Origin: Zootoca vivipara
Lineage: Eukaryota
Assembly: GCF_963506605.1 (NCBI RefSeq)
Contig: NC_083285.1
Span: forward strand, 62,000,001-62,064,000
Direction of reading: 5' to 3'
DNA length: 64,000 nt
Translations under genes and position numbers: made by a program
Part shown: positions 1,546-42,450 of the stretch, piece by piece
Position numbering within the stretch: position 1 is the first letter of the stretch
Layout of the letters: each line of letters opens with the position of its first letter
Notes under the pieces: generated by a model
Told to the model about the DNA's origin: nothing
Seen by the model: only the letters and a program-made list of their open reading frames with translations
The model's database searches: none

Positions 1546-1676
1546 AAGGGTGTCCTACCGAAACACAGGGATGAGCTGGGGTGGAGGGAGGAGGGGCAGG
1601 ATACGTCATGGATCGGGACAGGGTGGGGTGGGGATCACAGGAAAGAATCACAGCAACGCGTGGCCGGGTCAGCTAG

Positions 1677-2955: not shown

Positions 2956-2956
2956 G

Positions 2957-3011
<55 letters not shown>

Positions 3012-3018
3012 TGTTGTT
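2956..3018. repeat. Compound microsatellite (GTT)n(GCT)n
   Basis: Read directly from the sequence. Confidence 0.95.
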
Positions 3019-3019
3019 A

Positions 3020-3190
3020 TTTTGTCCAGATAGGGGCTCAGCTGGGCCATCAGCCAAAGCTGTTGGAAGACACTCCACACCACTGAGGCCACCTGACCCT
3101 CAAGTGACAGCCATGGATGCAGACGCACACCCAAGCTGCATACCTGCTCCTTCAGAGGGAGTGTAACCCCATCAACAGCAGGCAACCTCC
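3020..3190 (-). mobile_element. L2 ORF2 internal fragment
   Basis: Translation DGVTLPLKEQVCSLGV..LSLEGQVASV..FQQL..QLSPYLD resembles the post-RT region of L2. Confidence 0.7.
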
Positions 3191-3865: not shown

Positions 3866-3900
<35 letters not shown>

Positions 3901-5329: not shown

Positions 5330-5900
5330 GCTAAGGCCCCAATGTCTTGTTCCGGATCAGTCCCCAGTAGCCCATTGACGTACAGTGGCACCTCAGTCTG
5401 CGAACAGTCCTGTTAACGAACGCTTCAGACAACGAACTCCGCAAAACCGGAAGTAGGTGATCCGGTTAGTGAACTTTGCCCCGGAAGCTGAACGGAAGCT
5501 GAACATTGGCAGTGGGAGGCCTCATTAGGGAAAGTGCGCGCCTCGGTTTATGAACGCTTTGGTGTAAGAACGGACCTCTGGAACAGATTAAGTTCATAAA
5601 CCGAGGTACTACTGTATATGTGAAATCAGGATCCCCCCCCCATTGAATAATTCTTTACACTTAGTTTAATTGAATATCATGTGTCATTTTAATTCCCATT
5701 CCCCCCAAGATCCTCTCAATTCTTTTTTGTTCTTATCACCCTGGTGTCATCAGCAAACTTGAATATCCCACAACTCAGCCCAATCCCAGGCCAGCTATGG
5801 ACAAGGTAAAAAACACTGCTTCCATATTGATCCTTGGGGGCTCCACTCCTTATATTCCTCCACTGGAAAATTTTCATTTATTCTTACTCTCTGCTTCCTG
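5330..5900 (-). mobile_element. Degraded CR1 RT fragment interrupted by a MITE
   Basis: GGTGTCATCAGCAAACTT at about 5743-5760 is the reverse complement of AAGTTTGCTGATGACACC (KFADDT). Boundaries approximate. Confidence 0.6.
5383..5614. mobile_element. Tc1/mariner (pogo/Tigger-like) MITE
   Basis: TA|CAGTGGCACCTC...GAGGTACTACTG|TA: imperfect TIRs with TA target duplication. Confidence 0.85.
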
Positions 5901-7165
5901 TTTTTTTAGCTAGTTACTTATTGATAAGGGTACTAGGCTGCACCACACCCAGCTAAAGAGAGATTTACTTTGGTTTGGCCCTTGGTAATCGTGATTTTTG
6001 TCAAGGGAGTATGCAGTGATGTGGATTGTGGTGGCACTACAAAATGCAGTGGTTCTTATATCTCTAGGGTTCTGGAGGCATGCTCTTTTGGTTTTTGGTA
6101 GGAAGGTTTAAGTTTTTAGCTCTCATGGTTTTTGAGTAAAACTTGCAACCGTACTGATGACTTCTACCAAGACTTTGAAAAGTAGAGTGGCAGTAAGTAG
6201 AAGCTGGAAGTGGTTACTCAGTGGTGAAGACTTAGGCTCACTTAAGATGTAACACCAGACCATGATATGGTGTCACATGAGTGAATCTTTCTTTATCTTG
6301 AACTCTCCTTTCCCCTCTCATTGCGTGCTGCGATTACCTCCCTGCCTGCTTTATGCAAAACATTGCTTGTCATTGCATATGACTGTAAGTTGTTTTAAAC
6401 TATTTTTAACATTATGAATTAATGTTGTAGCCCACCCATGGACCTTAGGGTGAAGGCTGAGTAATAAAAACTAATATATTTTGAAGAAAATGATGAGTGA
6501 CAGAGGACTTTTTACAGTGGAATAGATAACTTGAGCTAGTGCTGTGTTTCATCCTCCTCCCTTTTTGGTTGGTGAGTGAAAGGGGATTGCTTCACTAAAC
6601 GGTTAACATTTCCTCCACAACTTAACTTATTTTAATCACACACAGGCCCTTAATATTGGTTGTGACACAGAGTTCATGGAAAGCAAATACTTCTCTATAT
6701 ATTGTTTTTGTGATCGTGCCCTTTTCCAGCAAGCTAGAGAAACGACCTCCCATAAACCTGTTGTGTGATTCAGGAAAGATTAGGTCTGGGCATGCCTAAA
6801 TTATTCATTACTTTGTTTATTATGAATACTAATGTAGCTTTCCTTTTGTTTCATGCTGGCTCTTTCATTCATTTTTCCTCCATGTTTCTCGCAAGCCGGA
6901 TGTTTAAGAGCATCCTGACAGTTTTCCAAGATTGCTTTAGTACTTAGGATTTCTTGCTCTCCCCTACCCTGCCCCAACTGTGCTAATAAGAACGTAAGAT
7001 GCTGCTGTATATGGAGACAGCCCAGTGGTCCATCTATCTCAGTACTGTCTACTTTGACTGGCAGTGGCTCTCTAGGTTTTCAGGTAGTTTTTTCCATCCC
7101 TACCAGGAGCTGCAAGGAACAGAGATGTCTGAGACCTTTCTGTATGCAGAGCTTGTCTTCTAAGG

Positions 7166-7606
7166 CAGGCATGGCCAACAGGTAGATCGGGATCTACCGG
7201 TAGATCCCCAGGACGTTTCTGGTAGATCCCGGGTAGATTGTGGGTTCCTTAGTGATCGCCAGCCTAAAAGAAAAGAAAGAGCCCCCCCCTAAAAAAAAAC
7301 CCTCAAGAACTCTCTTCTCCCCCCCAAAAAAGCTCAATAACCATGAGCAATTGCAGGGAGAGCTCCTTCCCTCTTCCCAATACTGAGCTTACCAGTATGT
7401 GTGTGAATGTGTTAGTGCATTGCATAGAAGGGCTGGATTGCTCCCTTTCCCTCTTGCCTGCCTAGAGCTCCTCGGCTCCTCCTCCCTCATGCCGGCAGAG
7501 AGGGAGAGGTGTGTGTGAGTTTGCGTGCGTGGGAGGAAAGCAGGAGCCTCGACTCACAGAGGGATTTCCCCCCTGTCCCTGTCTCATTGAGCCACTGGGA
7601 GCCAGC

Positions 7607-7661
<55 letters not shown>

Positions 7662-7728
7662 GGATGGGTGCCCCTAGCTGAGGGGGTGGGGGAGAAAGAG
7701 AGAGGTGGATGGGTGCCCGTAGCTGAGG

Positions 7729-7790
<62 letters not shown>

Positions 7791-8236
7791 AATGTTCAAA
7801 CATGACAGATGAGCACCTTAAGGATTCCTTGAAGCTGGCCCTGACACAGTACTCGTCTGATATTGAACAGTTGGTTACCAAAATGGTGATGCAGGTGTCA
7901 CACTAACAATGGATGAAGGCATGTATTTTTTTAAGAAATCTTGATAGGTAGGTTAATGGAGTGGGTAAAGGAGTTTGTGCAGCGTACAGTTTTGTGAGTG
8001 CTTTTATGCAATTCTCTCCCAAGAAATCTCTAAAAGTTTCTGTTGTCCCCTGTAAGAAAAATATTTGGGCAGTGCTCCCCCCAAAAAGGTTACCAAATCT
8101 GGTTACCCCCCTTTCCTTCTCCCTAAAAAAGCTCAACAACTTTGAGCTGAAACCCCCCCCCCAAAATGGGGGTGGATCACCGCCAGATTTTGATTCTGAA
8201 AGTAGATCATAGTCTCTTGGGAGTTGGCCACCCCTG
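7166..8236 (+). mobile_element. Non-autonomous hAT (Charlie-group) deletion derivative
   Basis: TIRs CAGGCATGGCCAAC / GTTGGCCACCCCTG; perfect 8-bp TSD TTCTAAGG (7158-7165, 8237-8244); internal (GA)n tracts and a transposase remnant. Confidence 0.9.
7790..7906 (+). pseudogene. C-terminal remnant of a hAT-Charlie transposase
   Basis: Hand translation QCSNMTDEHLKDSLKLALTQYSSDIEQLVTKMVMQVSH* fits the RS.LTD.HL...L......P.I..LV...Q.SH* end of Charlie/SPIN/GTF2IRD2-type transposases. Confidence 0.75.
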
Positions 8237-9009
8237 TTCTAAGGAGATTAGATTATGTAGTTGCAATCTTATTTTCTTTCTGTCAGACCAAGACAGAAAT
8301 ATGTACACACAAGGGTTAGCATCTTGCTCCTTTCCACCCACTTTTGTTGCACCAATGTGTTTACTGTTTGGCATGTGAGATGACCCCCCCTCCCCCTCCA
8401 AGGCACTACCTATACAGTACCTGGTCTGCATTTGCAATAAGTCTTATCAGATATAGTGTGGCAGCACCTGCACTTTGGAACTTTGGAAGCCTGGGGTTGC
8501 CTGTTCAGTGCAGAATGAAAGCAGGCTTTTGCCCTCCTCCAGCTAACGAGCTGTTGGTTATTGCTATTTTCACATTGGGCAGAATTGCCTTGCTCAGCTG
8601 CAAGCTTAGAGCTGTAAAGGAAACTGATTTTGTGCAGTGTTTCAGAGGCTGCATGTGACTTCAGCGAGGGGAGTTGTGGCAAAAACAAACCTTCAGTTGG
8701 CCATCCAATATTTGTCAACCTTTGTGTACATGTATAAATGTGATGTGCTAACTGTAGCAGCTGCCTGACATGGCTGCACTCCAAATCCAGTCTTCTAACT
8801 GGAGCAGGTCAGTGTATGTGTGTGCAAAAAAAGGGGCCAAAAGGCCAAAGAAGATTGGTCTTTCTGTGCTCTAAGTTATGGCAGGTGCTTTTATCGTAAT
8901 GAAACTGTCTTCTTCGAATATGATAGACTTTGTAGCAGTTCTGTTTCAGAATTTAAAGCTATACAGTACAGGTTTTGGAAGTATGTAGCTCCAAAGTGCT
9001 TTAAAAACA

Positions 9010-10535
9010 TCTGGCAGGGGAAAAAACCCAGAATAAAATATAAGATTTTAACAGACAAGAAAGAGAGAGGGGGATTCTCCCTGCCAGACTTGAAACTGTA
9101 TTTTGAAGCTGCAGCTTTGTGTTGGATGAAAGAATGGTTTTTGCTGAACAATACAGATATATTAGACTTGGAAGGATTTGACAATGCTTTTGGTTGGCAT
9201 GCATATATTTGGTATGATAAGTTAAAATTACACAAAGGTTTTAAAAATCATATAATTAGGAAATCATTGTTTAATGTATGGATTAGATATAAAGATCTGT
9301 TAGAAAACAAAACACCCAGGTGGGTTTCACCGTTAGAGGCCAAAGCATTTAAAAGGCGAAATATGGAAACCAAATGGCCAAAATATAAAGACATTTTGAT
9401 ACAAGAAGGAGATCAATGTAAAATGAAAACATATGATCAAATGAAGGAAATACTTACTGATTGGCTTCAGTATCATCAGATAAATGAGGCTTTTAAAAAT
9501 GATAAAAAAATAGGTTTTCAATTGGAAGAATCCAAATTGGAAACGCTGCTATTGAATTCGAGTACAAAAAATCTTTCAAAGATGTATAATTTGCTGCTGG
9601 AGTGGCAAACAAAAGATGAGTTAACGAAATCAACAATGATTGAATGGGCCAAAGATGTTGGACATAATATAATGATGGAGGACTGGGAAAGATTGTGGAA
9701 AAAATCTATTAAATTTACTGCATGTAATGTATTGAAAGAAAATGTTATGAAAATGATGTATAGATGGTATTTAACCCCAGTAAAATTAGCCAAAATGTAT
9801 CATACATATGACAATAAGTGTTGGAAATGTAATGCAGTGGAAGGAACTTTTTATCATATGTGGTGGACTTGCCCCAGGATAAAGGACTTCTGGGAGAAAA
9901 TTTATAATGAACTGAAAAAAGTGTTGAAGAACACTTTTATAAAAAAACCAGAAGCCTTTTTATTGGGACTAGTTGGGAGTGAAATACCGAAAAAAGATAC
10001 CACATTTTTCTTATATGCCACAACAGCAGCAAGAATTTTGATAGCGAAATATTGGAAGCTGAAAGAAATACCGACGGTGGAAGAATGGCAGATGAAGATG
10101 ATGGAATACATGGAATTAGCTGACCTGACCGGGAGACTTCGAGACCAGCGAGAAAAAATGGTGGAAGAAGATTGGAAATGTTTTAAAGACTATTTGAAAA
10201 AGAATAAAATAGACATAGAATAATAAGAAAGGGTTTTGATAGAAACAGGGAGCTGTAGCTTATCAAAATAGATTGGTGTTGAAGGAAAAACGTAATATCT
10301 ATCATGGTTAAGGATGATTATGGTATAAATATATGGAATCAAAAGTTAATGAGGAATATGAAGTAGAAATCGCTAAAAGATTAATATAGGATGATGCGCA
10401 GTAAGGAGGAATTGAGGAAGTCAAATATAATGATTAGAGACGAAATTGTGATTATGAAATTCTTGTTTGTGTGTATTTTGTTTTTATTTGTGTTTAATTA
10501 AAAAAATAAAAAAAATTTTTATAAAAAAAAAAAAA
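9010..10535 (+). mobile_element. Young 5'-truncated L1-clade LINE (ORF2 C-terminal part, 3'UTR, poly(A))
   Basis: About 400 uninterrupted codons: IWQGKKPRI..ERGGFSLPDLKLY.., and a CWKC..HMWWTC zinc knuckle, stop at 10221-10223. A-rich tail. TSD TAAAAACA (9002-9009, 10536-10543) at a TT/AAAA site. Confidence 0.92.
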
Positions 10536-11383
10536 TAAAAACAAGCTTAGCTGGCTTTGTTTTGTAGGTTCTTTGACCATTCCTTTCCTTTTTTCAGTTT
10601 TGTGGGTTAGATTGGTAAGCAGGTGTTACGGATGATAAACGTACATTTTGTGTAATGTTCTGGAACATTTAATTGCTGGGCATTCAATTATTAAGATTAC
10701 CTGACAGAAGCAATAGGAAAGCTTCAGACTGAATGTATGTTCTGTGCCCCTGGTGGTAGGATGAAGTGTCGCCTGAAATGCTCATAGGATTTTTCACTTT
10801 GCTGTGTAAGAATTCTGCTTCTGTTCAGGAACGTCAGAGGCAGGTGTGCATAAAATGGTACTGAACTGTTTTTGGGTTGCTTGAAAACCTTCTTGATTTT
10901 CTGCTAAGGGCTTGAAGTTCAGCAAGGTGGAGATTTGGGTTATTCTCCCCCCTCCCCGGCAACTTCACCAGTAGATTTGATGCCTGTCTCATTGCTGAAA
11001 TCTTTGCTCTGTGCTGTTGAAAAGTGCACAAGTTCATGTTTTGAGCAGGTGCAAACATGCTCACCTTCTGTAGTCCTTACCTCTAATTGAAGAAAGGCCA
11101 TGCTTACATCTGACTTGCATTTTAATATGCTTGATGGAGAAAGCGATGAGAGTTGCCTGCCTGGTGTTGCTTTTGCATCCATGTGCTGAAGTCACTTCAA
11201 ATCCATCACCTCTCACTGTACAGTTGTCAGGCACCCTAAGCGTATCCCCGGAAAGGTAACGGAGTTGCTGCTGCGTCGCTCTTGCTCCAGCTGATTTGAA
11301 GGCAGACGTGTAATGATCTGTAGGGATGAAACCTGTTGGCATTCCAGAGGAGCAGCTGGTGGCTTTGATCTTGCTAACTAGCA

Positions 11384-11456
11384 ATGATTCAAGTCTTGCA
11401 GATTGTGAAAGAGCTGGTGTCACCAGCACGACGTAGAACGGACTCTGCAAAGAAAG
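11384..11456 (+). CDS. USP6NL: USP6NL alternative first coding exon (MIQVLQIVKELVSPARRRTDSAKK-G), phase 1
   Basis: ATG in GCAATGA; 24 codons plus 1 nt; donor AAG|GTAGGA; phase compatible with the exon at 55688. Resembles the MIQVLQLVKELV.. N-terminus I recall for a mammalian USP6NL isoform. Confidence 0.85.
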
Positions 11457-12669
11457 GTAGGAACAGGCTTGAAATATTCATCCTTAACTGTTCAAGTAAT
11501 TCTTGCGGAAGCGTAGTCCTGCAGATTGGCACTTGAGCAACTGTCTGAAGCCTATGCCATCTTTATTTCAAGGCTGCATGTTGCACACTGGCATTCAGCT
11601 GCTGCAGCCTTGCTTTGAGTGGTGAGAAATCTGATACGAACAACATTGACAGTGCTAAAGAGAATTCTAATAGCCCTCAATAACTGAAGATGGAATTTAA
11701 GTATATGTAGATACTTTATTGTAAGGATCAGCTATTCTATTGCCTCTCTTCTCTTGTCCCCCCCCCCAATTTTTTTCCCTGTCTGTGTAATTCAGAGTGT
11801 TAAAATAGCAGTAGTATGCTAGAAACTCTGCAGATAATATTTTGTAACTAGTATATTTGAGAAACTAGATGTCAGTGCTGCTTGGGAATAGCGGCTTTAT
11901 AAATCTCATGTGCATTGCCTTTGAAGTGGGTTCTATTTAGTATGTTTAACTTTAAGATTAGATACTCTAAAGCAATTTTACTTAAAAGCACCCCTTTGAT
12001 TCCCTTGCATGTCAGTTATTTTGATGTAATTCCACTTGCTATTTTGTGCTTTAAAAATGCCTTCACAATATATCTGAACTGGTTCCGCCTACACAAGAGG
12101 GTTTAGTGAATTACTCTTGTTTTTACGACTGCAGCCAGCTTTAGAAATGTGCACATGTAGGTAATTATTTTGTAGATTTTTGAAATTAAACATTGTGATC
12201 ACAAGCAATCTTGAAGCCTTTTAAGAAAATTAGGATTTTAGCAGTATTTTACCTGAAATTATGAAGCAAAACTTATACATTCACTCACACACACACACAA
12301 ACACATACAATGTATATATAATGTGTGTGCTTATGGCATGTAGGTTGAGTGCATCTGTACTTTAAGTTCAGATACCCCAATAATAGACACGCTTTCCTTG
12401 AAGAAAGTCCAATTTGTTTAATTAGAACTTAATTTTTAAGCAAATATGCCCAAATCTGGAGACACAAACTACTGTTAATTTAAATGAGCTCATCCACAGA
12501 CACTTAAGTTTCAATTTTTTGGTTCTTGGATATGCTGTGATGTCATAGTGAGGGTACAATTGAACTTAGCTTTACGTTTGTTAGACAGTATGTGCATTGA
12601 CTATATATCAGTGTGAGTATTGGCCATATATAATGATGGGACTCATGTATACATGTTGCAAAGAACTAA

Positions 12670-13210
12670 CTCCGGATGGGGTTGCACTCCACCTGAAGAG
12701 CTAGGGATGCTCGTCCTGGAGATGAGGTGACGTTAGTGGTCCAGGACGACTCACCAGCTGCAGCCTTATTTAGAGATAACAGAACTTGCCTTGGTTACAC
12801 ATCTGGCTATGTCCAATATATTCCAGTATTGATTATTCTAATACACTTTACATGCATTTGAAGTTGGTCCAGAAACTAAAATTGGTGCAGAATGCAGTGA
12901 CTCTAATGCTTATAAGATATAGGCATCTTGTTCATATTCTGTACCAGGTACACTGATTGCCTATTTTTTGCAGGGCCAGATTTAAGTTGCTGGTGTTGAC
13001 CTGGCCTAATTTCCTTTGAACTTTAAAAGTTTAATTGAAATGGGCTTCTGATGCTCTGTTCTCTGATTCACTCTCTTCTCTGATTCACTGGTGAGAATTG
13101 TGAAATTAGTGAGTACCAGGGACCATATTGTTTTCTGGGGTGACCCCACATCTTTGGAATGCCCTCCCATGGAAAGTGTGCCTGGCTCCTGCTTTGCTGG
13201 CTTTATGAGG
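12670..13210 (+). mobile_element. Old degraded L2 fragment
   Basis: Remnants GATGGGGTTGCACTCC, TTGGTGCAGAATGCAG, TTTAAGTTGCTGGTGTTGACC and TGGAATGCCCTCCC are collinear with the other L2 copies in the window. Boundaries approximate. Confidence 0.6.
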
Positions 13211-23427: not shown

Positions 23428-26400
23428 GATCCCCTTCATGGATCAATGCCTTGTCGTGGCGAAGGGGCTTGAATAACTCGGAGAAGCTATGAGCTATGCC
23501 ATGCAGGGCCACCCAAGATGGACAGGTCATAGTGGAGAGTTTTGACTAAACGTGATCCACCTGGAGAAGGAACTGGCAAGCCACTCCAGTATCCCTGCCA
23601 AGAAAACTCCATGGACAAAGACAACAGGCATATAAAAGTTATGACGCTGGAAGATGAGCCCCTCAGGTCGGAAGGCGTCCAACATGCTACTGAGGAAGAG
23701 CGGAGGACAAGTACAAGTAGATTCAGAGCTGATGAAGCGGCTGGGCCAAAGCCGAAAGGACGCTCAGTTGCGGATATGCCTGGAAGCGAAAGGAAAGTCC
23801 GATGCTGTAAAGAAAAATATTGCATAGGAACCTGGAATGTAAGAACCATGGATGGAGGTAAGCTGGATGTGGTCAAAAATGAGATGACAAGAATAAATAT
23901 CGACATCCTGGGCATCAGTGAACTAAAATGGAAGGGAATGGGCGAATTCAGTTCGGGTGACTATCATATCTACTACTGTGGGCAAGAATCCTGTAGAAGA
24001 AATGGAGTGGCCCTCATAGTCAACAAAAGAGTGGCAAAAGCTGTATTGGGATGCAATCTCAAAAATGACAGAATGATCTCGATACGAATCCAAGGCAGAC
24101 CTTTTAACATCACAGTAATCCAAGTTTATGCACCAACTACCGGTGCTGAAGAAAGTGAAATTGACCAATTCTATGAAGACCTACAACACCTTCTAGAAAT
24201 GACACCAAAGAAGGATGTTCTTCTCATTACAGGGGATTGGAATGCTAAAGTAGGGAATCAAGAGATAAAAGGAATAACTGGCAAGTTTGGCCTTGGAGTT
24301 CAAAATGAAGCAGGGCAAAGGCTAATAGAGTTCTGTCAAGAGAACAAGCTGGTCATCACAAACACTCTCTTCCAACAACACAAGAGACGACTCTACACAT
24401 GGATATCACCAAATGGGCAGCATCGAAATCAGATTGATTATATTCTCTGCAGCCAAAGATGGAGAAGCTCTATACAGTCAGCAAAAACAAGACCTGGAGC
24501 TGACTGTAACTCAGATCATCAGCTTCTTATAGCAAAATTCCAGCTTAAACTGAAGAAAGTAGGAAAAACCACTGGGCCAGTAAGATATAATCTGAATCAA
24601 ATCCCTTATGAATACACAGTGGAAGTGAGGAACAGGTTTAAGGATTTAGATTTGGTGGACAGAGTGCCTGAAGAACTATGGATGGAGGCTCGTAACATTA
24701 TACAGGAGGCAGCAACGAAAACCATCCCAAGGAAAAGGAAATGCAAGAAAGCAAAATGGCTGTCCAACGAGGCCTTACAAATAGCGGAGGAGAGGAGGCA
24801 AGCAAAATGCAAGGGAGATAGGGAAAGATACAGGAAACTGAATGCAGATTTCCAAAAAACAGCAAGGAGAGACAAGAGGGTCTTCTTAAATGATCAATGC
24901 AAAGAAATAGAGGAAAACAATAGAATGGGGAAAACCAGAGATCTGTTCAAGAAAATTGGAGATATGAAAGGAACATTTCGTACAAAGATTACCATAATCA
25001 AGGACAAAAGTGGTAAGGACCTAACAGAAGCAGAAGACATCAAGAAGAGGTGGCAAGAATACACAGAGGAATTATACCAGAAAGATATGGAGGTCTCGTA
25101 CACCCCAGGTAGTGTGGTTGCTGACCTTGAGCCAGACATCTTGGAGAGTGAAGTCAAATGGGCCTTAGAAAGCACTGCTAATAACAAGGCCAGTGGAAGT
25201 GATGATATTCCAGCTGAACTATTTAAAATTTTAAAAGATGATGCTGTTAAGGTGCTACACCCAATATGCCAGCAAGTTTGGAAAACTCAGCAATGGCCAG
25301 AGGATTGGAGAAGATCAGTCTACATCCCAATTCCAAAGAAGGGCAGTGCCAAAGAATGCTCCAACTACCGCACAATTGCGCTCATTTCACACGCTAGCAA
25401 GGTTATGCTCAAAATTCTACAAGGCAGGCTTAGGCAGTATGTGGACCGAGAACTCCCAGAAGTGCAAGCTGGATTTCGAAAGGGCAGAGGAACCAGAGAC
25501 CAAATAGCAAACATGCGCTGGATTATGGAGAAAGCTAGAGAGTTCCAGAAAAACGTCTACTTCTGCTTCATTGACTATGCAAAAGCCTTTGACTGTGTCG
25601 ACCACAGCAAACTATGGCAAGTTCTTAAAGAAATGGGAGTGCCTGATCACCTCATCTGTCTCCTGAGAAATCTCTATGTGGGACAAGAAGCTACAGTTAG
25701 AACTGGATATGGAACAACTGATTGGTTCAAAATTGGGAAAGGAGTACGACAAGGTTGTATATTGTCTCCCTGCTTATTTAACTTATATGCAGAATTCATC
25801 ATGCGAAAGGCTGGACTAGATGAATCCCAAGCCGGAATTAAGATTGCCGGAAGAAATATCAACAACCTCAGATATGCAGATGACACAACCTTGATGGCAG
25901 AAAGCGAGGAGGAATTAAAGAACCTTTTAATGAGGGTGAAAGAGGAGAGCGCAAAATATGGTCTGAAGCTCAACATCAAAAAAACCAAGATCATGGCCAC
26001 TGGTCCCATCACCTCCTGGCAAATAGAAGGGGAAGAAATGGAGGCAGTGAGAGATTTTACTTTCTTGGGCTCCTTGATCACTGCAGATGGTGACAGCAGT
26101 CACGAAATTAAAAGACGCCTGCTTCTTGGGAGAAAAGCAATGACAAACCTAGACAGCATCTTAAAAAGCAGAGACATCACCTTGCCTACAAAGGTCCGTA
26201 TAGTTAAAGCTATGGTTTTCCCAGTAGTGATGTATGGAAGTGAGAGCTGGACCATAAAGAAGGCTGATCGCCGAAGAATTGATGCTTTTGAATTGTGGTG
26301 CTGGAGGAGACTCTTGAGAGTCCCATGGACTGCAAGAAGATCAAACCTATCCATTCTTAAGGAAATCAGCCCTGAGTGCTCCCTGGAAGGACAGATCGTG

Positions 26401-26653
26401 AAGCTGAGGCTCCAATACTTTGGCCACCTCATGAGAAGAGAAGAATCCTTGGAAAAGACCCTGATGTTGGGAAAGATTGAGGGCACTAGGAGAAGGGGAC
26501 GACAGAGGACAAGATGGTTGGACAGTGTTCTCGAAGCTACGAACATGAGTTTGACCAAACTGCGGGAGGCAGTGCAAGACAGGAGTGCCTGGCGTGCTAT
26601 GGTCCATGGGGTCACGAAGAGTCGGACACGACTAAACGACTAAACAACAACAA
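23428..26653 (+). mobile_element. Full-length BovB (RTE-clade) LINE, about 3.2 kb
   Basis: BovB 5' end (GCCTTGTCGTGGCGAAGGGGCTTG), 3' end GGGGTCACGAAGAGTCGGACACGACTAAACGACTAAAC(AAC)n; TSD CATGGGTGATTTT (23404-23416, 26654-26666). Confidence 0.97.
23611..26643 (+). CDS. Intact BovB ORF: APE endonuclease plus reverse transcriptase (1010 aa from the first ATG; frame open from 23542)
   Basis: EN motifs GTWNVRT, LGISE, VYAPT, GDWNA, IDYIL, SDH; RT motifs QAGFR, FIDYAKAFD, GVRQGCILSP, YADD; no stops or frameshifts. Confidence 0.96.
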   Translation: MDKDNRHIKVMTLEDEPLRSEGVQHATEEERRTSTSRFRADEAAGPKPKGRSVADMPGSERKVRCCKEKYCIGTWNVRTMDGGKLDVVKNEMTRINIDILGISELKWKGMGEFSSGDYHIYYCGQESCRRNGVALIVNKRVAKAVLGCNLKNDRMISIRIQGRPFNITVIQVYAPTTGAEESEIDQFYEDLQHLLEMTPKKDVLLITGDWNAKVGNQEIKGITGKFGLGVQNEAGQRLIEFCQENKLVITNTLFQQHKRRLYTWISPNGQHRNQIDYILCSQRWRSSIQSAKTRPGADCNSDHQLLIAKFQLKLKKVGKTTGPVRYNLNQIPYEYTVEVRNRFKDLDLVDRVPEELWMEARNIIQEAATKTIPRKRKCKKAKWLSNEALQIAEERRQAKCKGDRERYRKLNADFQKTARRDKRVFLNDQCKEIEENNRMGKTRDLFKKIGDMKGTFRTKITIIKDKSGKDLTEAEDIKKRWQEYTEELYQKDMEVSYTPGSVVADLEPDILESEVKWALESTANNKASGSDDIPAELFKILKDDAVKVLHPICQQVWKTQQWPEDWRRSVYIPIPKKGSAKECSNYRTIALISHASKVMLKILQGRLRQYVDRELPEVQAGFRKGRGTRDQIANMRWIMEKAREFQKNVYFCFIDYAKAFDCVDHSKLWQVLKEMGVPDHLICLLRNLYVGQEATVRTGYGTTDWFKIGKGVRQGCILSPCLFNLYAEFIMRKAGLDESQAGIKIAGRNINNLRYADDTTLMAESEEELKNLLMRVKEESAKYGLKLNIKKTKIMATGPITSWQIEGEEMEAVRDFTFLGSLITADGDSSHEIKRRLLLGRKAMTNLDSILKSRDITLPTKVRIVKAMVFPVVMYGSESWTIKKADRRRIDAFELWCWRRLLRVPWTARRSNLSILKEISPECSLEGQIVKLRLQYFGHLMRREESLEKTLMLGKIEGTRRRGRQRTRWLDSVLEATNMSLTKLREAVQDRSAWRAMVHGVTKSRTRLND

Positions 26654-27657
26654 CATGGGTGATTTTTGTGCATTTCGCCAATATGTGTTGTCATGTACAG
26701 TTAATTTGCAATACTAACTTTTAATAGACAGGTACAACCCCCTTGAAGCATTTATTGCCTTTACAAACAAATGTGCCATGTTAAAAAAGAATTTAAAGTT
26801 TTGAAGAGGTGACCTAATTTTTAAAATAGTTTATTTTTCTTATAACTCCTAGAGCACTGTTAAACACCCATGAGTATGGGATTTACTATGTTTAAATATG
26901 AATGTTAGCCTCAAGCTTTGGCCATTAAACCTGCAAGCTTCCTCATTAAATTTACAGGTTGTACTAGCGTGTCCAACATGTTGACAGTGCTTATGATATC
27001 TACTTTGTAAGACAGCTATTTATTTACATTTGCCTCACATTGGGCCAGGCTTGTACCTTCTTGGCTTTAATTTAAGAGTTATTCAAAGTGAAATACAAAA
27101 TGTGCCACGACCCCAGTTTACACCATGATTTGTAGCTGTTCATCGGAGCTCATTGTTCCAAGACACATGCTTCTTAAAGACAACTGTGTGGTCCATATTC
27201 TTTTACCTAGAATACTGAAAACCCTAGCTTCTTTGTAGGAGAAATTGGTTTCTAGCCATCAAGGTTGTACGTTGGTTTGAAAATACAAAAGCAATGAATA
27301 AGAAAGAGCGAAATTTTCAGCATGGCTTTTGATTCTTATGTTCCTAAGTCCATGTATCAAAAGGGTGCAAAGACCGGAGCAAGTTCTTTAGGTACAAGAA
27401 TAGCAAACCCCAGGTTTTTTTAAAAGGGGCTGTATAGCCTAGCTTTAGAAATGATTTTTTTTTTTGCTGGGGTGGTGGGAGCTTTTGCTGCTGCTTCTCT
27501 TTTCTATGTTACTTCAGGAGTTAAAGATGCAACTGCATTTTGCCTGCGGGGATGAGGAAATGCAACCAATGTTGGGTTGGTTTTGGTATCAAAGCCCAAA
27601 ATGGTGGTGTCCAGGCCCCCCTTCTTCCCCCTTCTTGGCTTTCTGTATTTTTAGACT

Positions 27658-27705
<48 letters not shown>

Positions 27706-36999: not shown

Positions 37000-37137
37000 G
37001 CACTGTTTGATATTGTTTTATATTCTGCTGGAAGCTGCCCAGAGTGGCTGGGGAAACGCAGCCAGAAAGGGAGGGGTATAAATAACGAAGTTGTTGTTGT
37101 TGTGGGTATAAATAATGAAGTTGTTGTTGTTGTTGTT
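37000..37137 (+). mobile_element. L2 3' terminus with duplicated tail
   Basis: GGAAGCTGCCCAGAGTGGCTGGGGAAAC..GGGGTATAAATAA matches the L2 end at 621-720; the GGGTATAAATAA..GAAG(TTG)n block occurs twice. Confidence 0.75.
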
Positions 37138-38096
37138 ACAAGTCTGTATGACAGCTCTTGAAGCAGAGAGTTGTCAACCTGGGTTTCAATAGCCAGTTCT
37201 AGCTGAAAGTTGAAACTGCAGGAAGACTAGCCAGGAAGGAAACCTCTGACCGACAACAGGTCAGTGTGGATCATGTGATACTACAGGATCCCAATAAAAG
37301 CTTTCCATAATAATAAGAGCTCTGCTGGATGACATCAAAGGTTCATCTAGTCCAGCATCCTATTCCCATAGTGGCCAAACAGTTGCTTATGGGGAGACTG
37401 GTAGCAGAAGCTGAGCCCAGCAGAACTTGTCCTTCCCAGCAAATGGTATTCAGAGGCACACTTTATTCAATACTGCTGGTAGCGCACATCCACCAGGGCT
37501 ATTGATAATCTTACTTTCCGTGAATTTGTCTCCGTTTAAAGACACCCAAGTTAGTGGCCGTCACTGCCTCTTGTGGGAGCGAACTCCATAGTTTAACTGT
37601 GTACTCTGTGTGGGAGTACTTTCTTTTGTCTGTCCTGAATCTTCCAACATCCATCTTCATTGAATGACCCTGATTTCTAGCACTGTGAGTGGTGGAGAAA
37701 AACTCCCAGCTTAGGTTTGCTCTCTCGTCTGCAAGGGGCTTTGAATATGTTCTTTCTGATGACTACCTGTGATCTCTTCCCCCTTCAAGATAAAAGAAGC
37801 CAGGAATAGCTGGTGGGATAAGGAAGTAAGCAAAGTGATACTCTCTACTCAGAACCTCTAAAATGAGGCCTTCAGTTGGGTTGCTGGGTAAGCAAGGAAA
37901 AGGGTCGATGAGGGGCTATCTGGGGTGATGAAGAAGAGGTAACTGTGTTGGAGAAATTGGAGGAGTATGTGATCTTTGTGTGGAGGGTAATGGTCTTATT
38001 CAGATCTAATTTCTTTTTTTTAAAATTAATTTTATTGATTTTGCATATTAACAAAGCAAAGAGATAAACACATAAACAAAAAAAATAACATATTTT

Positions 38097-38820
38097 CCTC
38101 CTTCTTCCAACCCCCCCCCCATGAGATCCCTCCTGCCACCAGGTATTCCCATGGACAGTGCGCAGTCGAAGGTGGTGCATCTTATAGTTGGGCTTGTCCC
38201 CACCCCCCTCCTCTCCCCAGAACCCCCCCTGCCACCGAGAGATCCTAGGGATATAAGAAGAGAGGGGGTGGGTGTTCACCCAACTATTTATCTAAACTTG
38301 ATCAAAAATCACCCAAAAAGAGAAGAAAAAAAAACCCACAGGAATAATTAATAAAAAAAAAAGAAGAAGAGGAAAAAAGAACAGCTGCAAAAAAAAAGAA
38401 AAAAAGAAAAAAAAATGAAAAAACAAAAAGGAACAATTATTAATTATTCCTTTCTTTTCTTTTTTTAAAATCATTGTATTATTATGGGCTTCCCCTACCT
38501 CCCCCTTTTTCTGATTTTCATTTTTGACTCCATTTTAGCAGTTTTCTTCTCATATTCCCCATTCTATTTTCCAAACTCTCTAAACTTACTTCAATAGTAT
38601 CCTTATTTCTATTAAATTTATTTTCTGACATCTTTTCCCATTCCCTCCCTCCCCTCCTCCCCCCCAGCACTCCCTCTGCCACCGAGAGCCCCAGAGGAGA
38701 GAAAGGGAGAGGCAATGGTTCTTTTTCCAATTGGGACTTCCCCCCTCCCCGCCCTCCCCACACCAGGAGCCCCCCCTGCCACCAGGAGCTCCCCGCGCGC
38801 AGAGGGCCGACAAGAGGTCC
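38097..38820 (-). ncRNA. Four long RNA hairpins with an invariant GGUGGCAG loop (function unknown, pri-miRNA-like)
   Basis: Hand-folded stems at 38734-38820, 38638-38718, 38184-38287 and 38097-38175; loop motif (TGCCACC on +) at 38777, 38677, 38230 and 38134; many G-U pairs work only on the minus strand. Confidence 0.65.
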
Positions 38821-39112
38821 AGAACCCCCAACCGTCCCTTCAATCATTCATCTTACCAAATTCTCTTTTTTGATACTTCTAAATAACTCCTAAATCTTAT
38901 TTCTAACTTATCAATTTTCCTCCCCCCCCCAGAACTCCCATAATTTTAAAAACCTTTTTACATTCCCAATTCTAGATTTTGTCTTTATCCTCAATTCTTT
39001 CCTCTCTATCCCCTGATCCCGGCTTTCCCCTTCCAGTCCAGCAAGTCCAAAGTCCGTGATCCAGTTTTCAGTCCTTTTTTATCCATCCTATTAAACAACA
39101 AATATTCCTCCT

Positions 39113-39517
39113 TCATCCCACCCCCTTCCTGACCAATTTTTCAATCCAATCTTCTCCGTTCTCTCCCTCCCATAAGTCCCTTCTTCTTTGCTTGATGCTT
39201 TTCTTGTGAGTTTTTTGTCTCTTCAAAAATTCTTGCTTGTTCCCCTCCTGAGGAGGGTTAATTCCACTCTCAGCTAAGTCTTTATTCATTGGCAAGTCCT
39301 GTATTTCATCGTCATTTACTTCAATTATGTTGTAAATCGGTTCATCTGTCTGTTTATCCTCATGCACCATTTCTTGAAGTATTTCATCCTCCTGTAGATC
39401 TTGATCTTGGTTTGTTCCTTCCAATTGTTGTTGAGTCTTATACATATTAATTCTCATTTCCCACAAGAGTTTCAAAACTTTCTCCTGGAAGCCAGGTGTG
39501 TAATTCTCTGTTGGCAT
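39113..39517 (-). CDS. 134-aa ORF of the non-autonomous L1-like element (unknown function)
   Basis: ATG start (AAAAATGC), uninterrupted, A-rich on the sense strand as L1 ORFs are, located where ORF1 would begin; acidic middle and basic C-terminal stretch. No homology established. Confidence 0.5.
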   Translation of the reverse strand: MPTENYTPGFQEKVLKLLWEMRINMYKTQQQLEGTNQDQDLQEDEILQEMVHEDKQTDEPIYNIIEVNDDEIQDLPMNKDLAESGINPPQEGNKQEFLKRQKTHKKSIKQRRRDLWEGENGEDWIEKLVRKGVG

Positions 39518-39979
39518 TTTTCTAGCTTTTCAAGGGCAGAGCAAGACTTGGAAAACAGGAAGTGGTTACAAGTTGCAGTTCTTCCACATAGCCCAAACTG
39601 GATACAATATATTCTCAAATGTCGAACCAAAAGTTTTAAAATGTCAATTCCTTCCTTTCACTCACCCCATTATATTCCACTCGCTGTTCTGTTCGGGGTG
39701 CCGAATTTCAGGGTACAGAGGGGGGTCTCTTCTTCAGCTAAATATGTTTGCAGGGATTCTTATTGTCTATAACAGTTCTCCCCCCTAACCCTGCCTCAGG
39801 AGGAGAGTCTTTAGTCAGTCCTTGGAGATATTCAAACAATAAAGTTTTTAGCCCCCGGCACTGGGGTTCCTTCTTAAGCTGCTTTCCTTTTTAGATCAGT
39901 AAGGGGGAGATCGGCTTCCTTTTTTTAAATCTCACCCCCATTCCAAATCTCAAGTCCAATTTTAAATCTTTGAGTCCTT

Positions 39980-40318
39980 TTTACTCACGGTCTCTCAATT
40001 TCCTGACTTCTTCTTTGGAAAAATCCAGCGCTCTCCGCCTCCGGCACGGAGCTTCTCCCTGCGAGGGTAGCGATGGCGCTCCAAAATGGCCCCCGCGACT
40101 GCGACCCATCTTGCTCCGGAGCTCTTATTAGAGCCTACCGGAGAGTTGGGGAGTCGGGATTGGGGCGCTGCTTGGCTATTTCTGCCCCCAGAACGCGCGA
40201 TCTGGGGTTCTTTGGGGTGCAGCGGCGCTCCCGCTGCTTCCCCCTCCCTCGCAGAGACGGGTCGCCTCGGAGCTCGAGACGGACCCCGCCGGACGGCGCT
40301 GGCGCTGAACCGGAAGCC
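39980..40318 (-). promoter_or_regulatory. CpG-rich internal Pol II promoter / 5'UTR of the L1-like element
   Basis: CpG-dense 300 bp; ETS-type CTTCCGG at the 5' end; YY1-type GGCCATTTTG (about 40082-40091); splice donor ACC|GTGAGT with GT at 39988-39987. Confidence 0.6.
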
Positions 40319-40825
40319 TATTCAGATCTAATTTCTTCCCCAAAGAAAATGTAGCACATTTTTGGGCAAGAAACTACCATGCATATTCCAACAATTTTAT
40401 TTCTTACCTTGTAAAATTAAACAGTAATTCTAATTTAAATTAATGAGTATTGAGTGTGTAATATAAAGAGTAATCATGTCATGATTATGTCACTGGTATG
40501 ATCTTTGCTGTGTCCTTAAGAGCTATGGAAAATAGCGAAAGAGGAACATAGGTGGGTTTACAAGTTCCTAGCTTGTTTTTTATATAAATGTAGAGGGGGG
40601 GGGAGGAGATGGAGAGAGGTGATCTCATAGATGTTTAAATGTGAACTTGGAAACAGGAAATAAGGAGACAAATGTGCACGGCACTGGAGCCAAGTGAGTT
40701 CTTGTTTGATTTACAGTTAACCCATTTATATGCTGGCAGGAATGTGGGCTGGGTCTGTGCTATCAGTTATAACAGCATAGGAAACTTAATTTTATATTCT
40801 GATATTGTCTTGACCACTTTTAAAA

Positions 40826-40867
<42 letters not shown>

Positions 40868-40901
40868 CTACCTGTCAGTCAGGTGATAGTACTCTGATGG
40901 A

Positions 40902-41151
40902 CATGGGTAGGCAAACTAAGGCCCGGGGCCTGGATCCAGCCCAATCACTTTCTAAATCCGGCCCATGGATGGTCTGGGAATCAGCGTGTTTTTACATTAG
41001 TAGAATGTGTGCTTTAATTTTAAATGCATCTCTGGGTTATTTGTGGGGCATAGGAATCCGTTCATTTTTTCCCTTCAAAATATAGTCCGGCCCCCACAAG
41101 GTCTGAGGGACAGTGGACTGGCCCCCTCCTGAAAAAGTTTGCCGACCCCTG
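40902..41151 (+). mobile_element. hAT MITE related to OposCharlie1 (OC1)
   Basis: Ends CATGGGTAGGCAAACT / AGTTTGCCGACCCCTG; TSD CTGATGGA/CTGATGGG (7 of 8 match); subterminal ATAGTCCGGCCC..GGTCTGAGGGACAGTG.ACTGGCCCCCT as I recall for OC1. Confidence 0.8.
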
Positions 41152-42450
41152 CTGATGGGGGTGATTTTGGCAGATGGATGGTTGGTGGTATGGAGTTTGA
41201 TTCTGTGTTGGCTGCTCATTCCACTTCTCCTGCTGGGAACTGGTGTGGGCAACCAAAACAGCTGGATTTAAACCACCCTGGTATAGTAATCTTAGTTATC
41301 ATTGACATGGGACTTTTTTTTTTTTACTCAGTACTGTATATCTGTGATAAACAGCAGCCTTGCTATTGTTGTTCTTGACTGGTTTAGCGAGCTGTCCTTA
41401 ATTGCTACCTTACTATGACTGACATTATATATACTTCAAAAATGGTCACTTGGTTGACCACCAGAGTTTGAATCCAGACACCCAGCCTATGTTTTATGGA
41501 CCACTTACATAACCACCAAGGACAATGCTACTCTGTTTGGGAAGGCAAGCGAATTGCAGCTCCTACCACTGCTGCTGCATTATGTCACAGCCTCCTGCTT
41601 TTGTTCACTGCTGAATGTCTGGACCATTTTTATTGTCTGCTCCTGTTTGTGTGGTTTTATATGTCTATAAAAACACAGAAAACACAGTGGTTCTTTGCTT
41701 CATTTCTCAGTATTGGCACTCTGATACTATAAGGAAGCCTCGTGGTGCATTGACATGTAATTTAGGTTAACATATAAGGAGGCTAGTGCTTTGCATGTTT
41801 GAAGAGAGACAAATGATTGCAATCCATAGAAATGAAAACCAGGAGGGTATCGCTGTGGAGCAGCGCTCAGTATGGAATGTCTGGAGTCTTCCAGCTAAAA
41901 CACAGCTAGAAAGCGGGGTTGTAATTTCATAGGTTCCTCTTTGCTAAGTTTGTTTCAAACAAACATCACTCTTTGAACAGGAACATTCTGATCTGTGTTG
42001 ATGTTTTAACAATTTCAGCTAAAATACTCTGTAGCCAAGGAAAATGCCAGTTGGTATTCTCTGCTGCAAACACTGCTGTCCTTGATATGCTTCATCTGTC
42101 TTTGTGTGAAACAGTTTATTGACATCTTCTTGTTTCTTCTGGAGTGGAATGCTGGGAGTGTAGGCTGGAGTGGAGAATACTTGCATGTCTCCTGAAAGAC
42201 ACTTTGCTTTCAACAAACAGTACCATTGTTTTGAAAATCTGTAGCCTGTAAAGTTGACTACATTGGGCTTGGTGTTCCAATGTGAAAAGATGAGAATTCA
42301 AACTAGCTGGCTTATCTGAAACCATCATTTGCAGCAAAGCAAAGTAATGTATTCTTCATCCTTCTTGCTTCGGATTTTCAAGTTGCGTGAACGGGACTGG
42401 CTTTGCATTGTTATACTATGTGGTGATCTGAAAGCAAAGGATCTTGCTCA

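What the first reader, a model, noticed from the sequence alone, without database searches (positions are those of the whole stretch)
38016..40318. Full-length 2.3-kb non-autonomous L1-like element lacking ORF2 and a normal ORF1
Seen: a perfect 19-bp TSD brackets the whole unit, so it inserted in one event by target-primed reverse transcription. It keeps a CpG-rich 5' end (GGCTTCCGGTT), one 134-aa ORF, a long 3' region with two GGGGAAG(T/C)CC motifs (a similar GAGGAAGTC lies in the 3'UTR of the L1 at about 10414-10422), the hairpin cassette, a UG-rich tract, AATAAA and an A tail. No EN or RT remnant is visible. Established: HAL1 (half-L1) elements encode ORF1 only and rely on L1 ORF2 in trans. 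Inference: an L1-parasitic family with its own Pol II promoter, small protein and structured RNA cargo, rather than a deleted L1 copy. Retained CpGs and the intact TSD suggest it is young.
Basis: partly seen in the sequence, partly recalled or inferred. Interest (0 to 1): 0.8.

Follow-up and report, generated by a model that had tools for sequence, protein, structure and literature searches.

The report
Young RT-less lizard retroposon copy
This 2.3-kb insert is a real, recent copy of a multi-copy "hitch-hiker" jumping element in a lizard genome: it has no copying enzyme of its own, carries one orphan reading frame and a block of strong RNA hairpins, and is absent from the same site in a related species.

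Summary
A 2,303-bp unit (38016-40318, sense on the minus strand) lies between an exact 19-bp target-site duplication. It starts GGCTTCCGGTT in a about 330-400-nt CpG island and ends in AATAAA plus a 6-nt A tail. It has one 134-aa ORF and no EN or RT remnant.

Laying public contigs on it added three facts:
- In the source species the whole body is at multi-copy depth, tens of times the single-copy flanks. Variant contigs are 86-99% alike.
- The first about 300 nt are 5-10 times more abundant still.
- A related species, with flanks about 3.6% diverged, has the precise empty site with one copy of the 19-mer, and almost none of the body.

So this is a young member of a lineage-restricted, non-autonomous poly(A) retroposon family. 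It was most likely inserted by L1 machinery in trans.

The "L1-like/HAL1" label is not shown. The ORF is an orphan: no Pfam, PDB or HMMER relative among 1.84 billion representatives. The 3' end is not significantly like the L1 3'UTR in the window. Only the 5'-terminal motif resembles published L1 5' termini.

The scan has flagged at least 8 similar 1.3-2.1-kb RT-less elements on other DNA of this genome. I could not check whether they are the same family.

The parts
38016..40318 (-). Whole retroposed unit, 2,303 bp, apparently full length
   Evidence: It is bracketed by the exact 19-bp TSD. This interval plus one TSD copy is precisely absent from the related species' contig (X14 record 13). 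Depth falls to single copy just outside both ends.
37997..38015 (.). Target-site duplication, copy next to the A tail (TATTCAGATCTAATTTCTT)
   Evidence: Exact 19/19 match to 40319-40337.
40319..40337 (.). Target-site duplication, copy next to the 5' end
   Evidence: Exact 19/19 match to 37997-38015. The empty site in organism B carries one copy.
39990..40318 (-). 5' CpG-island module, the presumed internal Pol II promoter. It starts GGCTTCCGGTT, contains GCCATTTT and AAGATGG (YY1-like) motifs, and ends at a GTGAGT donor-like site
   Evidence: GC is 0.51-0.68 and CpG observed/expected 0.92-1.05. The terminus resembles the published L1 5' termini GACTTCCGGTG and GGACTTCCGGTT. The bins 40024-40311 have 5-10 times the depth of the rest of the element in organism A. 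The YY1-like and donor-like motifs were read from the sequence. Promoter function is inferred.
39518..39989 (-). Leader between the CpG island and the ORF, about 470 nt. The whole 801-nt region upstream of the ORF has four ATGs
   Evidence: Sequence and ATG count. Multi-copy depth.
39113..39517 (-). Orphan 134-aa ORF: A-rich, with a predicted long N-terminal helix, an acidic disordered middle and a basic C-terminal part
   Evidence: ORF list. No Pfam match, no word-index homologue, no hit among 1.84e9 representatives, no PDB hit and low atlas recognition. The AF2 model has pLDDT 58.6. P is about 0.015 in shuffles.
39093..39125 (-). 33-nt direct repeat, copy 1, overlapping the ORF stop. With its partner at 38083-38115 it brackets the 1-kb structured 3' segment
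   Evidence: Family D7 in the repeat finder, 85% identity.
38085..38833 (-). Structured 3' region with four hairpins, each topped by GGUGGCAG (loops at 38783-76, 38683-76, 38236-29, 38140-33). An A-rich/T-rich inverted-repeat block lies between the two hairpin pairs
   Evidence: The 741-nt fold has z = -13.2. Per-hairpin MFE is -71, -56, -69 and -35 kcal/mol, about double the antisense values. Cognate arms pair better than non-cognate arms for hairpins 1-3. Hairpins 2 and 3 share a 38-nt block. Rfam gives only sub-threshold miRNA-like hits.
38300..38440 (-). T-rich (polypyrimidine) repetitive tract in the sense RNA, ending in a TTTGCAG acceptor-like site
   Evidence: Sequence and repeats D1, D4 and I1-I12. 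Lizard L1 3'UTRs are reported to carry T-rich or C-rich tracts (PMC5381506).
38083..38115 (-). 33-nt direct repeat, copy 2, just upstream of the UG-rich tract
   Evidence: Family D7 in the repeat finder.
38040..38095 (-). UG-rich tract before the poly(A) signal
   Evidence: Sequence. It is compositionally like the L1 3' end at 10460-10500 but not significantly similar.
38031..38036 (-). AATAAA polyadenylation signal, 9 nt before the A tail
   Evidence: Sequence.
38016..38021 (-). A tail, 6 nt (8 if the first two A's of the TSD are counted)
   Evidence: Sequence.

Best explanation
This is a young, apparently full-length copy of a multi-copy, lineage-restricted, non-autonomous poly(A) retroposon family of a lizard.

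**Proposed mechanism**
1. A master copy is transcribed by RNA polymerase II from the CpG-island promoter carried inside its own 5' end. The start lies at or near GGCTTCCGG, the kind of terminus that lizard and fish L1s use.
2. The RNA is cleaved and polyadenylated at its own AATAAA.
3. The poly(A) RNA is then copied into the genome by the endonuclease and reverse transcriptase of an autonomous L1 acting in trans (target-primed reverse transcription). The nick falls at a T-rich site (5'-TTTCTT|CC on the bottom strand), and the staggered second cut gives the 19-bp TSD.

**Shown here**
- The insertion signature and the empty site in a related species.
- Multi-copy status, with diverged variants.
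- Absence of EN and RT.
- Presence of L1 in the same genome.
- The hairpins, as predicted folds.

**Inferred**
- Pol II transcription.
- L1 as the driver.
- That copies are themselves transcription-competent.

The 134-aa ORF and the hairpin cassette are carried by the family. Their role is not shown. My guess is that the ORF keeps the RNA on ribosomes or makes a small RNA-binding protein, and that the hairpins stabilise the RNA or bind a factor.
For: - **Insertion signature.** Exact 19-bp TSD, plus AATAAA, an A tail and a T-rich nick site.
- **Empty site.** In related organism B a single-copy contig joins 37996 directly to 40319 (X14 record 13). Its flanks differ at 23 of 643 letters.
- **Copy number in organism A.** Flank depth is about 30 in X1 and about 58 in X4. 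Summed depth over every 144-nt bin of the body is 165-1,764 in X1 and 268-7,719 in X4, with no 3' to 5' gradient.
- **Diverged variants.** Variant contigs sit at multi-copy depth and are 86-99% like this copy (records 3-6 and 18-21). At several sites the family's majority letter differs from this copy.
- **Presence in two studies.** Junction contigs are at single-copy depth in both, which fits a fixed or homozygous insertion.
- **Expression.** A few RNA reads cover the 5' end and the ORF start, all with the first mate on +.
- **No EN or RT**.
- **A possible driver.** An L1 with an open ORF2 C-terminal frame lies in the same window (E 1e-19 to human ORF2p).
- **5' terminus.** It matches the published conserved L1 5' termini.
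- **No host-gene relative of the ORF**.
- **Scan notes.** They list at least 8 similar RT-less elements in this genome. These are unverified.
Against: - **No second copy read.** I could not read any other full-length copy, so a shared architecture with independent TSDs is not directly shown. Summed contig depth is only a rough proxy for copy number.
- **Short A tail.** Six nucleotides is short for a young L1-mediated insertion.
- **Atypical nick site.** It is T|C rather than the T|A preferred by human L1 EN.
- **No shared 3' sequence.** Nothing significant is shared with the one L1 3' end available.
- **A puzzle over organism B.** Variants 6-14% diverged coexist in A, yet the ORF region is absent from B at 85% likeness or more. 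This is hard to reconcile with a simple post-split origin. The reads tool itself warns that a dip in depth is no finding.
- **Thin RNA evidence.** It rests on a handful of reads, and library strandedness is not verified.
Confidence: 0.8

Rival explanations
1. It belongs to a HAL1-type family proper. On this reading the family arose from an autonomous L1 by loss of ORF2 and most of ORF1. The 134-aa ORF would be the diverged N-terminal (coiled-coil) part of ORF1p, and the 5' and 3' regions would be L1 UTRs. This is a special case of the best explanation and concerns origin only.
For: - The 5' terminus GGCTTCCGGTT is close to the conserved termini of Anolis clade-1 L1 (GACTTCCGGTG) and zebrafish L1 (GGACTTCCGGTT).
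- The long leader with a CpG island at the 5' extremity resembles lizard clade-1 L1 5'UTRs.
- The 3' region has a T-rich tract, AATAAA and an A tail, as described for lizard L1 3'UTRs.
- The ORF is 42% A on the sense strand. L1 coding sequence is A-rich on its sense strand.
- The predicted long N-terminal helix, residues 8-51, could be a short coiled coil.
- The 5' module is far more abundant than the body, as if shared with other, possibly autonomous, families.
Against: - Nothing matches ORF1p: no Pfam Transposase_22 family, no PDB ORF1p, and no hit in 1.84e9 representatives. Yet the coiled-coil domain of lizard L1s is reported to be well conserved and alignable.
- There is no RRM or CTD remnant in any frame.
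- The 3' end is not significantly like the window's L1 3'UTR.
- CTTCCGG is also a common ETS-type promoter motif. This point rests on my own knowledge.
Confidence: 0.2
2. It is a processed pseudogene: a retrocopy of a host mRNA or lncRNA made once, or many times, from a single expressed parent gene, and not a self-propagating family.
For: - It has an mRNA-like layout: a CpG-island 5' end, an ORF, a long 3'UTR, AATAAA, an A tail and a TSD.
- The motifs at the 5' end are typical of housekeeping promoters. This rests on my own knowledge.
Against: - The ORF has no relative in any protein collection searched.
- The ORF region has zero depth in a species whose flanks differ by only about 3.6%, so no conserved parent gene is seen there.
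- Several diverged variants are each at multi-copy depth, which points to more than one source copy.
- A consensus GTGAGT donor and a polypyrimidine-CAG acceptor remain unspliced inside the element.
- The promoter-like CpG island is carried within the copy.
Confidence: 0.07
3. It is a one-off internally deleted copy of an autonomous L1. On this reading the multi-copy depth comes from full-length L1s that share its 5'UTR, ORF1 start and 3'UTR.
For: - Depth alone cannot see a unique deletion junction inside a 144-nt bin.
- The 5' terminus is L1-type.
Against: - There is no ORF1p or ORF2p homology anywhere in the element.
- The step in depth between the first about 300 nt and the rest argues for modules of different copy number, not one parental element.
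- The scan's notes list at least 8 other 1.3-2.1-kb RT-less elements with an orphan ORF in this genome (unverified).
Confidence: 0.05

Closest known systems
HAL1 (half-L1) elements of mammals
   Same: Both are non-autonomous and lack ORF2. Both carry a single ORF and have L1-type ends (poly(A), TSD). Both are multi-copy and are presumed to use L1 ORF2p in trans.
   Different: The HAL1 ORF is a recognisable ORF1p. Here the ORF has no detectable ORF1p homology and is only 134 aa long. The host is a lizard, not a mammal. The long hairpin-rich 3' region has no HAL1 counterpart that I know of.
SVA / LAVA-type composite retroposons of hominoids
   Same: Both are 1-3 kb, Pol II-type and polyadenylated at their own AATAAA. 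Both are mobilised by L1 in trans with L1-type TSDs, and copies are mostly full length. Both have G-rich repetitive internal parts, and both are lineage-restricted and young.
   Different: No homology is expected and none was tested. SVA is non-coding and built from Alu-like, VNTR and SINE-R parts. This element has a CpG-island 5' module with an L1-like terminus, an orphan ORF and discrete GGUGGCAG hairpins.
Lizard L1 families, Anolis clade 1 (PMC5381506)
   Same: Both share the 5'-terminal CTTCCGGT motif, a CpG island at the 5' extremity of a long leader, an A-rich ORF, a T-rich tract in the 3' region, and AATAAA plus an A tail.
   Different: This element has no ORF1p and no ORF2p, and is 2.3 kb instead of about 6 kb. 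It has one CpG island, not two. G-rich hairpins are not described for lizard L1s, although two Anolis families do have G-rich tracts. There is no significant similarity to the one L1 3' end in this window.
Processed pseudogenes (L1-made retrocopies of mRNAs)
   Same: The insertion signature is the same, and so is the mRNA-like layout.
   Different: No parent gene or conserved protein is found. Diverged variants are multi-copy. The promoter is carried along, and splice-site-like signals are left unspliced.

Membership tests
HAL1 (ORF1-only L1 derivative) | The single ORF is homologous to L1 ORF1p (coiled coil, RRM, CTD; Pfam Transposase_22 group) | tested here: not met
   No Pfam match at E<=1 apart from a chance SIR3_C hit. 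There are 0 hits in PDB at E<=10 and 0 hits in 1.84e9 representatives. No RRM or CTD remnant shows in the three sense frames.
HAL1 (ORF1-only L1 derivative) | No ORF2 (endonuclease / reverse transcriptase) | tested here: met
   Pfam finds nothing on the ORFs. tblastn with the window's L1 ORF2 C-terminal part and BovB EN-RT gives only chance hits. At 2.3 kb the element is too short for ORF2.
HAL1 (ORF1-only L1 derivative) | L1-type insertion signature: poly(A) end, TSD, T-rich nick site | tested here: met
   19-bp exact TSD, AATAAA plus A6, and a TTTCTT| nick site. The related species has the empty site.
HAL1 (ORF1-only L1 derivative) | UTRs homologous to those of a contemporaneous autonomous L1 | tested here: inconclusive
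   Only the 5'-terminal motif matches published L1 termini. The 3' end is not above shuffles against the window's L1 3'UTR. No full-length L1 of this genome was available for comparison.
Non-autonomous L1-dependent Pol II retroposon (SVA-like way of working) | Repeated family with variants, not a single copy | tested here: met
   Body depth is tens of times the single-copy flanks in two studies. Variant contigs are 86-99% alike at multi-copy depth. This is a proxy: no second full copy was read.
Non-autonomous L1-dependent Pol II retroposon (SVA-like way of working) | Own Pol II promoter and own polyadenylation signal | tested here: inconclusive
   The CpG island sits at the 5' end and AATAAA lies 9 nt before the tail. 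A few RNA reads cover the 5' end. Neither the TSS nor the poly(A) site has been mapped.
Non-autonomous L1-dependent Pol II retroposon (SVA-like way of working) | Mobilised in trans by L1 ORF2p | not testable with these tools
   This is inferred from the signature and from the presence of L1 in the genome. It needs a retrotransposition assay.
Processed pseudogene | A parent, intron-containing host gene with the same exonic sequence | tested here: not met
   The ORF has no protein relative. The ORF region is not seen in the related species' contigs. The source genome itself could not be searched.
SINE (Pol III) | Small-RNA-derived head (tRNA, 7SL, 5S) with an internal Pol III promoter, and a length under about 600 bp | tested here: not met
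   No Rfam family at E<=1 other than sub-threshold miRNA-like hits on the hairpins. The length is 2.3 kb.

The most novel reading that the evidence does not exclude
The family is a new kind of L1 parasite that brings its own parts. The orphan 134-aa protein (helix, acidic linker, basic tail) would act in cis as a minimal substitute for ORF1p, or as a ribosome-docking device. The sense-specific GGUGGCAG hairpins would be a selected RNA module that recruits ORF2p or shields the RNA. On this reading the family, including its diverged subfamilies, entered or arose in this species' lineage after it split from a relative only about 3.6% diverged, by introgression, horizontal arrival or very fast turnover.
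Probability: 0.12. Interest if true: 0.8.

Novelty: new variant of a known kind. Interest (0 to 1): 0.55.

Why it matters
Non-autonomous, Pol II-transcribed retroposons that live off L1 are well studied only in mammals (SVA, HAL1, processed pseudogenes). A young, still largely full-length family in a lizard would give an independent case for asking what an RNA needs in order to capture L1 ORF2p.

Several features make it useful for that:
- It has an L1-style 5' terminus.
- It carries an orphan ORF.
- It carries a block of strand-specific hairpins.
- An empty site is at hand in a close relative.

It would also supply presence/absence markers for closely related lizards. It is a likely source of mis-annotated 'genes' and of splice or poly(A) signals inside host introns.

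Tried and rejected
**Searches that found nothing or were blocked**
- **Other copies in the window.** blastn of the element against the 64-kb window found only weak internal self-matches, so no second copy could be read.
- **Rfam.** Only sub-threshold miRNA-like hits on the hairpins.
- **ORF relatives.** Pfam, the word-index protein search, the full HMMER scan, PDB and the ESM atlas (recognition 1522, below the level of known families) all came back empty.
- **AF2 model.** The single-sequence model is low-confidence (pLDDT 58.6), so I made no fold search.
- **3' end against L1.** The alignment to the window's L1 3'UTR is not above block shuffles. A shared-tail (SINE-like) relation is therefore not supported.
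- **Other CTTCCGGT sites.** The sites at 5446 and 14910 are unrelated repeats.
- **The window's L1.** It is 5'-truncated, with no ORF1 or 5'UTR to compare, and no clear TSD was found for it.
- **CTCF-like reading of the GGTGGCAG motif.** I considered this by eye and dropped it, because only the first half of the motif fits.
- **The search of earlier findings.** Look-ups by sequence and by relatives were blank.
- **Literature.** Searches found no description of such a family in lizards. Repbase and Dfam could not be consulted.

**Not tested**

Full report
**1. What is there**

The unit runs from 38016 to 40318, and its sense strand is the minus strand. An exact 19-mer, TATTCAGATCTAATTTCTT, lies at 37997-38015 and again at 40319-40337.

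Read in the sense direction, the element has these parts:
- It starts GGCTTCCGGTT.
- A CpG island follows for about 330-400 nt, with GC 0.51-0.68 and CpG observed/expected 0.92-1.05. The rest of the element is CpG-depleted, at 0.0-0.64.
- The island ends at a consensus-like splice donor (ACC|GTGAGTAA).
- An 801-nt leader with four ATGs precedes the single long ORF, 134 aa at 39517-39113.
- The remaining 1.1 kb holds two pairs of long hairpins separated by an A-rich/T-rich block, then a UG-rich tract, AATAAA (38036-38031) and a tail of only six A's.

No EN or RT remnant exists. Pfam finds nothing on the ORFs. tblastn with the two LINE proteins of this window gives only chance hits. The window has no N.

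**2. It is a real insertion, and a young one**

I laid public contigs on 37000-41300.

Two runs of the source species come from different studies, X1 and X4. In both, single-copy-depth contigs with no differences cover the two junctions (records 2 and 17 over 37624-38059, records 7 and 22 over 40290-40814). Their depth equals that of the flanks, about 30 in X1 and about 58 in X4. The insertion is therefore present, apparently on both chromosomes, and is not an assembly artefact.

In a related species (organism B, run X14) one 773-nt contig at single-copy depth (48.5) runs from 40808 down to 40319 and continues without a break at 37996 down to 37844. That skips exactly the element plus one copy of the 19-mer, so this is the empty site. 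The aligned flanks differ at 23 of 643 letters, about 3.6%. The insertion is therefore younger than the split of these two species. This fits the perfect TSD and the retained CpGs.

**3. It is one of many**

In the source species every 144-nt bin of the element has a summed contig depth far above the flanks. The range is 165-1,764 in X1 against about 30, and 268-7,719 in X4 against about 58. The lowest values fall in the low-complexity bin, which the tool partly skipped.

The tool warns that summed depth is not a copy number, so I read it only as 'tens of copies'. Depth does not fall from the 3' end towards the 5' end, so most copies are not 5'-truncated.

Individual contigs at multi-copy depth are 86-99% like this copy:
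- X1 record 5: 1 difference in 137 nt, depth 187.
- X4 record 19: 5 differences in 167 nt, depth 1,354.
- X4 record 20: 12 differences in 192 nt, depth 974.
- X1 record 4: 20 differences in 147 nt, depth 219.

At 39157, 39168, 39192, 39389 and 39514 nearly all of the depth carries a letter other than this copy's. So there is a family with subfamilies, which a single-source retrocopy would not give. Four of those five differences change the amino acid, which gives no hint of purifying selection on the ORF.

The scan's own notes list at least eight other 1.3-2.1-kb 'RT-less L1-type elements with an orphan ORF' on other pieces of this genome. One follow-up calls such an element a young multi-copy family that is absent from its site in another animal. 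I could not read those sequences, so I treat the notes as leads that agree with my reading, not as support.

**4. Two things I cannot explain**

First, the first about 300 nt (40024-40311) have 5-10 times the depth of the rest: 6,144-13,054 in X1 and 15,692-42,177 in X4. Truncation during reverse transcription would give the opposite pattern. The simplest reading is that this CpG-island module is shared with other, more numerous elements, either sister RT-less families or autonomous L1s.

Second, organism B shows zero depth over the ORF (39160-39591) and most of the body at 85% likeness or more. It has only about one to four copies' worth of a few segments, including the 5' module. Yet organism A holds variants 6-14% diverged. 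A family that old should predate a 3.6% split. Possible explanations are fast turnover of master copies, introgression or horizontal arrival, or an artefact. The tool itself says that a dip in depth is no finding.

**5. What drives it**

The signature points to L1-type target-primed reverse transcription: AATAAA, an A tail, a 19-bp TSD, and a nick after TTTCTT on the bottom strand.

L1 is present in this genome. Window 8820-10223 is an open 467-aa frame homologous to human ORF2p residues 836-1225 (E 1e-19), and it is followed by a UG-rich tract and an A-rich tail.

The other LINE in the window (23542-26643) has EN and RT domains and ends in the ...GACTAAACAACAACAACA tail. From my own knowledge of that tail I read it as a BovB/RTE element. 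The retroposon has no such tail.

Two quirks stand against a textbook L1 event. The tail is only 6 nt, and the nick is T|C rather than T|A.

**6. Is it L1-derived or HAL1-like?**

For:
- The terminus GGCTTCCGGTT is close to the conserved 5' termini reported for Anolis clade-1 L1 (GACTTCCGGTG...) and zebrafish L1 (GGACTTCCGGTT).
- Lizard clade-1 L1s have long leaders with a CpG island at the 5' extremity.
- Their 3'UTRs carry T-rich or C-rich tracts, then AATAAA and an A tail (PMC5381506).
- The ORF is 42% A on the sense strand, and L1 coding sequence is A-rich on its sense strand.

Against:
- The ORF matches nothing. It has no Pfam family, no candidate in the word-index search, no hit at E<=0.001 among 1.84 billion representatives, and no PDB chain even at E<=10. 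Its recognition in the protein atlas is low.
- The same paper says the coiled-coil domain of lizard ORF1p is well conserved and alignable, so a recent ORF1 remnant should have been detectable.
- The last 400 nt align to the window's L1 3'UTR no better than block-shuffled controls: score 38 against 29.7 +/- 4.4, maximum 51.

I therefore do not file the element under HAL1. It works like a HAL1 or SVA-type L1 parasite, but its origin remains open.

**7. The ORF and the hairpins**

An ATG ORF of 134 codons or more appears in 1.4-1.6% of dinucleotide shuffles of the element. That is mildly unexpected and proves nothing. A single-sequence AF2 model (pLDDT 58.6) gives a long helix (residues 8-51), a disordered acidic middle and basic C-terminal helices. 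This is compatible with a small nucleic-acid-binding protein, and equally with no fold at all.

The four hairpins are better supported as a feature:
- The 741-nt region folds with z = -13.2 against shuffles.
- Each unit centred on GGUGGCAG folds at -71, -56, -69 and -35 kcal/mol. That is about twice the antisense strand's value, because many pairs are G-U.
- For hairpins 1-3 the cognate arms pair much better than arms swapped between hairpins: -56 to -66 against -38 to -49 kcal/mol.
- GGTGGCAG occurs four times on the element's sense strand and twice elsewhere in the window, counting both strands.
- Hairpins 2 and 3 share a 38-nt loop-plus-3'-arm block.
- A 33-nt direct repeat (39125-39093 and 38115-38083, 85%) brackets the whole 1-kb structured segment. 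This suggests the segment was acquired or expanded as a block.

The function of the hairpins is unknown.

**8. Expression**

About 6% of one RNA run (X21) was read. A handful of reads cover the 5' module (mean depth 5.6 and 1.9) and the ORF start (2.6), all with the first mate on the + strand. In a usual stranded library that means RNA from the minus strand, which is the element's sense. A few reads over the 3' hairpins lie the other way. This is weak evidence that some copy of the family is transcribed.

**9. Verdict**

The 'L1-like/HAL1' ancestry and a functional small protein are not shown. I found no published description, but Repbase and Dfam could not be checked. The scan had already flagged similar elements elsewhere in this genome.

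The USP6NL context was not tested.

Noticed in passing
window 23542-26643 (+): An open 1,033-aa frame with endonuclease and reverse-transcriptase Pfam domains. Its 3' end reads ...GAGTCGGACACGACTAAACGACTAAACAACAACAACA, so it is a BovB/RTE-type LINE copy with an apparently intact ORF.
   Followed up: partly
window 8820-10545 (+): A 5'-truncated L1. Its open 467-aa frame is homologous to human ORF2p residues 836-1225 (E 1e-19). A UG-rich tract and an interrupted A-rich tail follow. No TSD was found.
   Followed up: partly
window 37000-37143, 37288-37719, 40888-41175: Extremely abundant repeats flank the insertion site. Summed contig depth is 1e4-4e6 in both species, and RNA reads are plentiful. 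They look SINE-like, and many contigs show internal deletions of 56-164 nt.
   Followed up: no
window 40024-40311 (-): The CpG-island 5' module of the element is 5-10 times more abundant in the source species than the rest of the element. It is present at about single-copy level in the related species.
   Followed up: partly
window 39983-39990 and 38383-38430 (-): A consensus-like splice donor (GTGAGTAA) sits right after the CpG island. A polypyrimidine tract plus CAG, which looks like an acceptor, lies in the 3' region. Spliced shorter family members or host-exon trapping are conceivable. Untested.
   Followed up: no
window 7490-7800: A long (GA/CT)n-rich microsatellite block gives spurious SLSLSL and RERERE ORFs on both strands.
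   Followed up: no
window 27655-27705: A (CA)n microsatellite of about 25 units.
   Followed up: no
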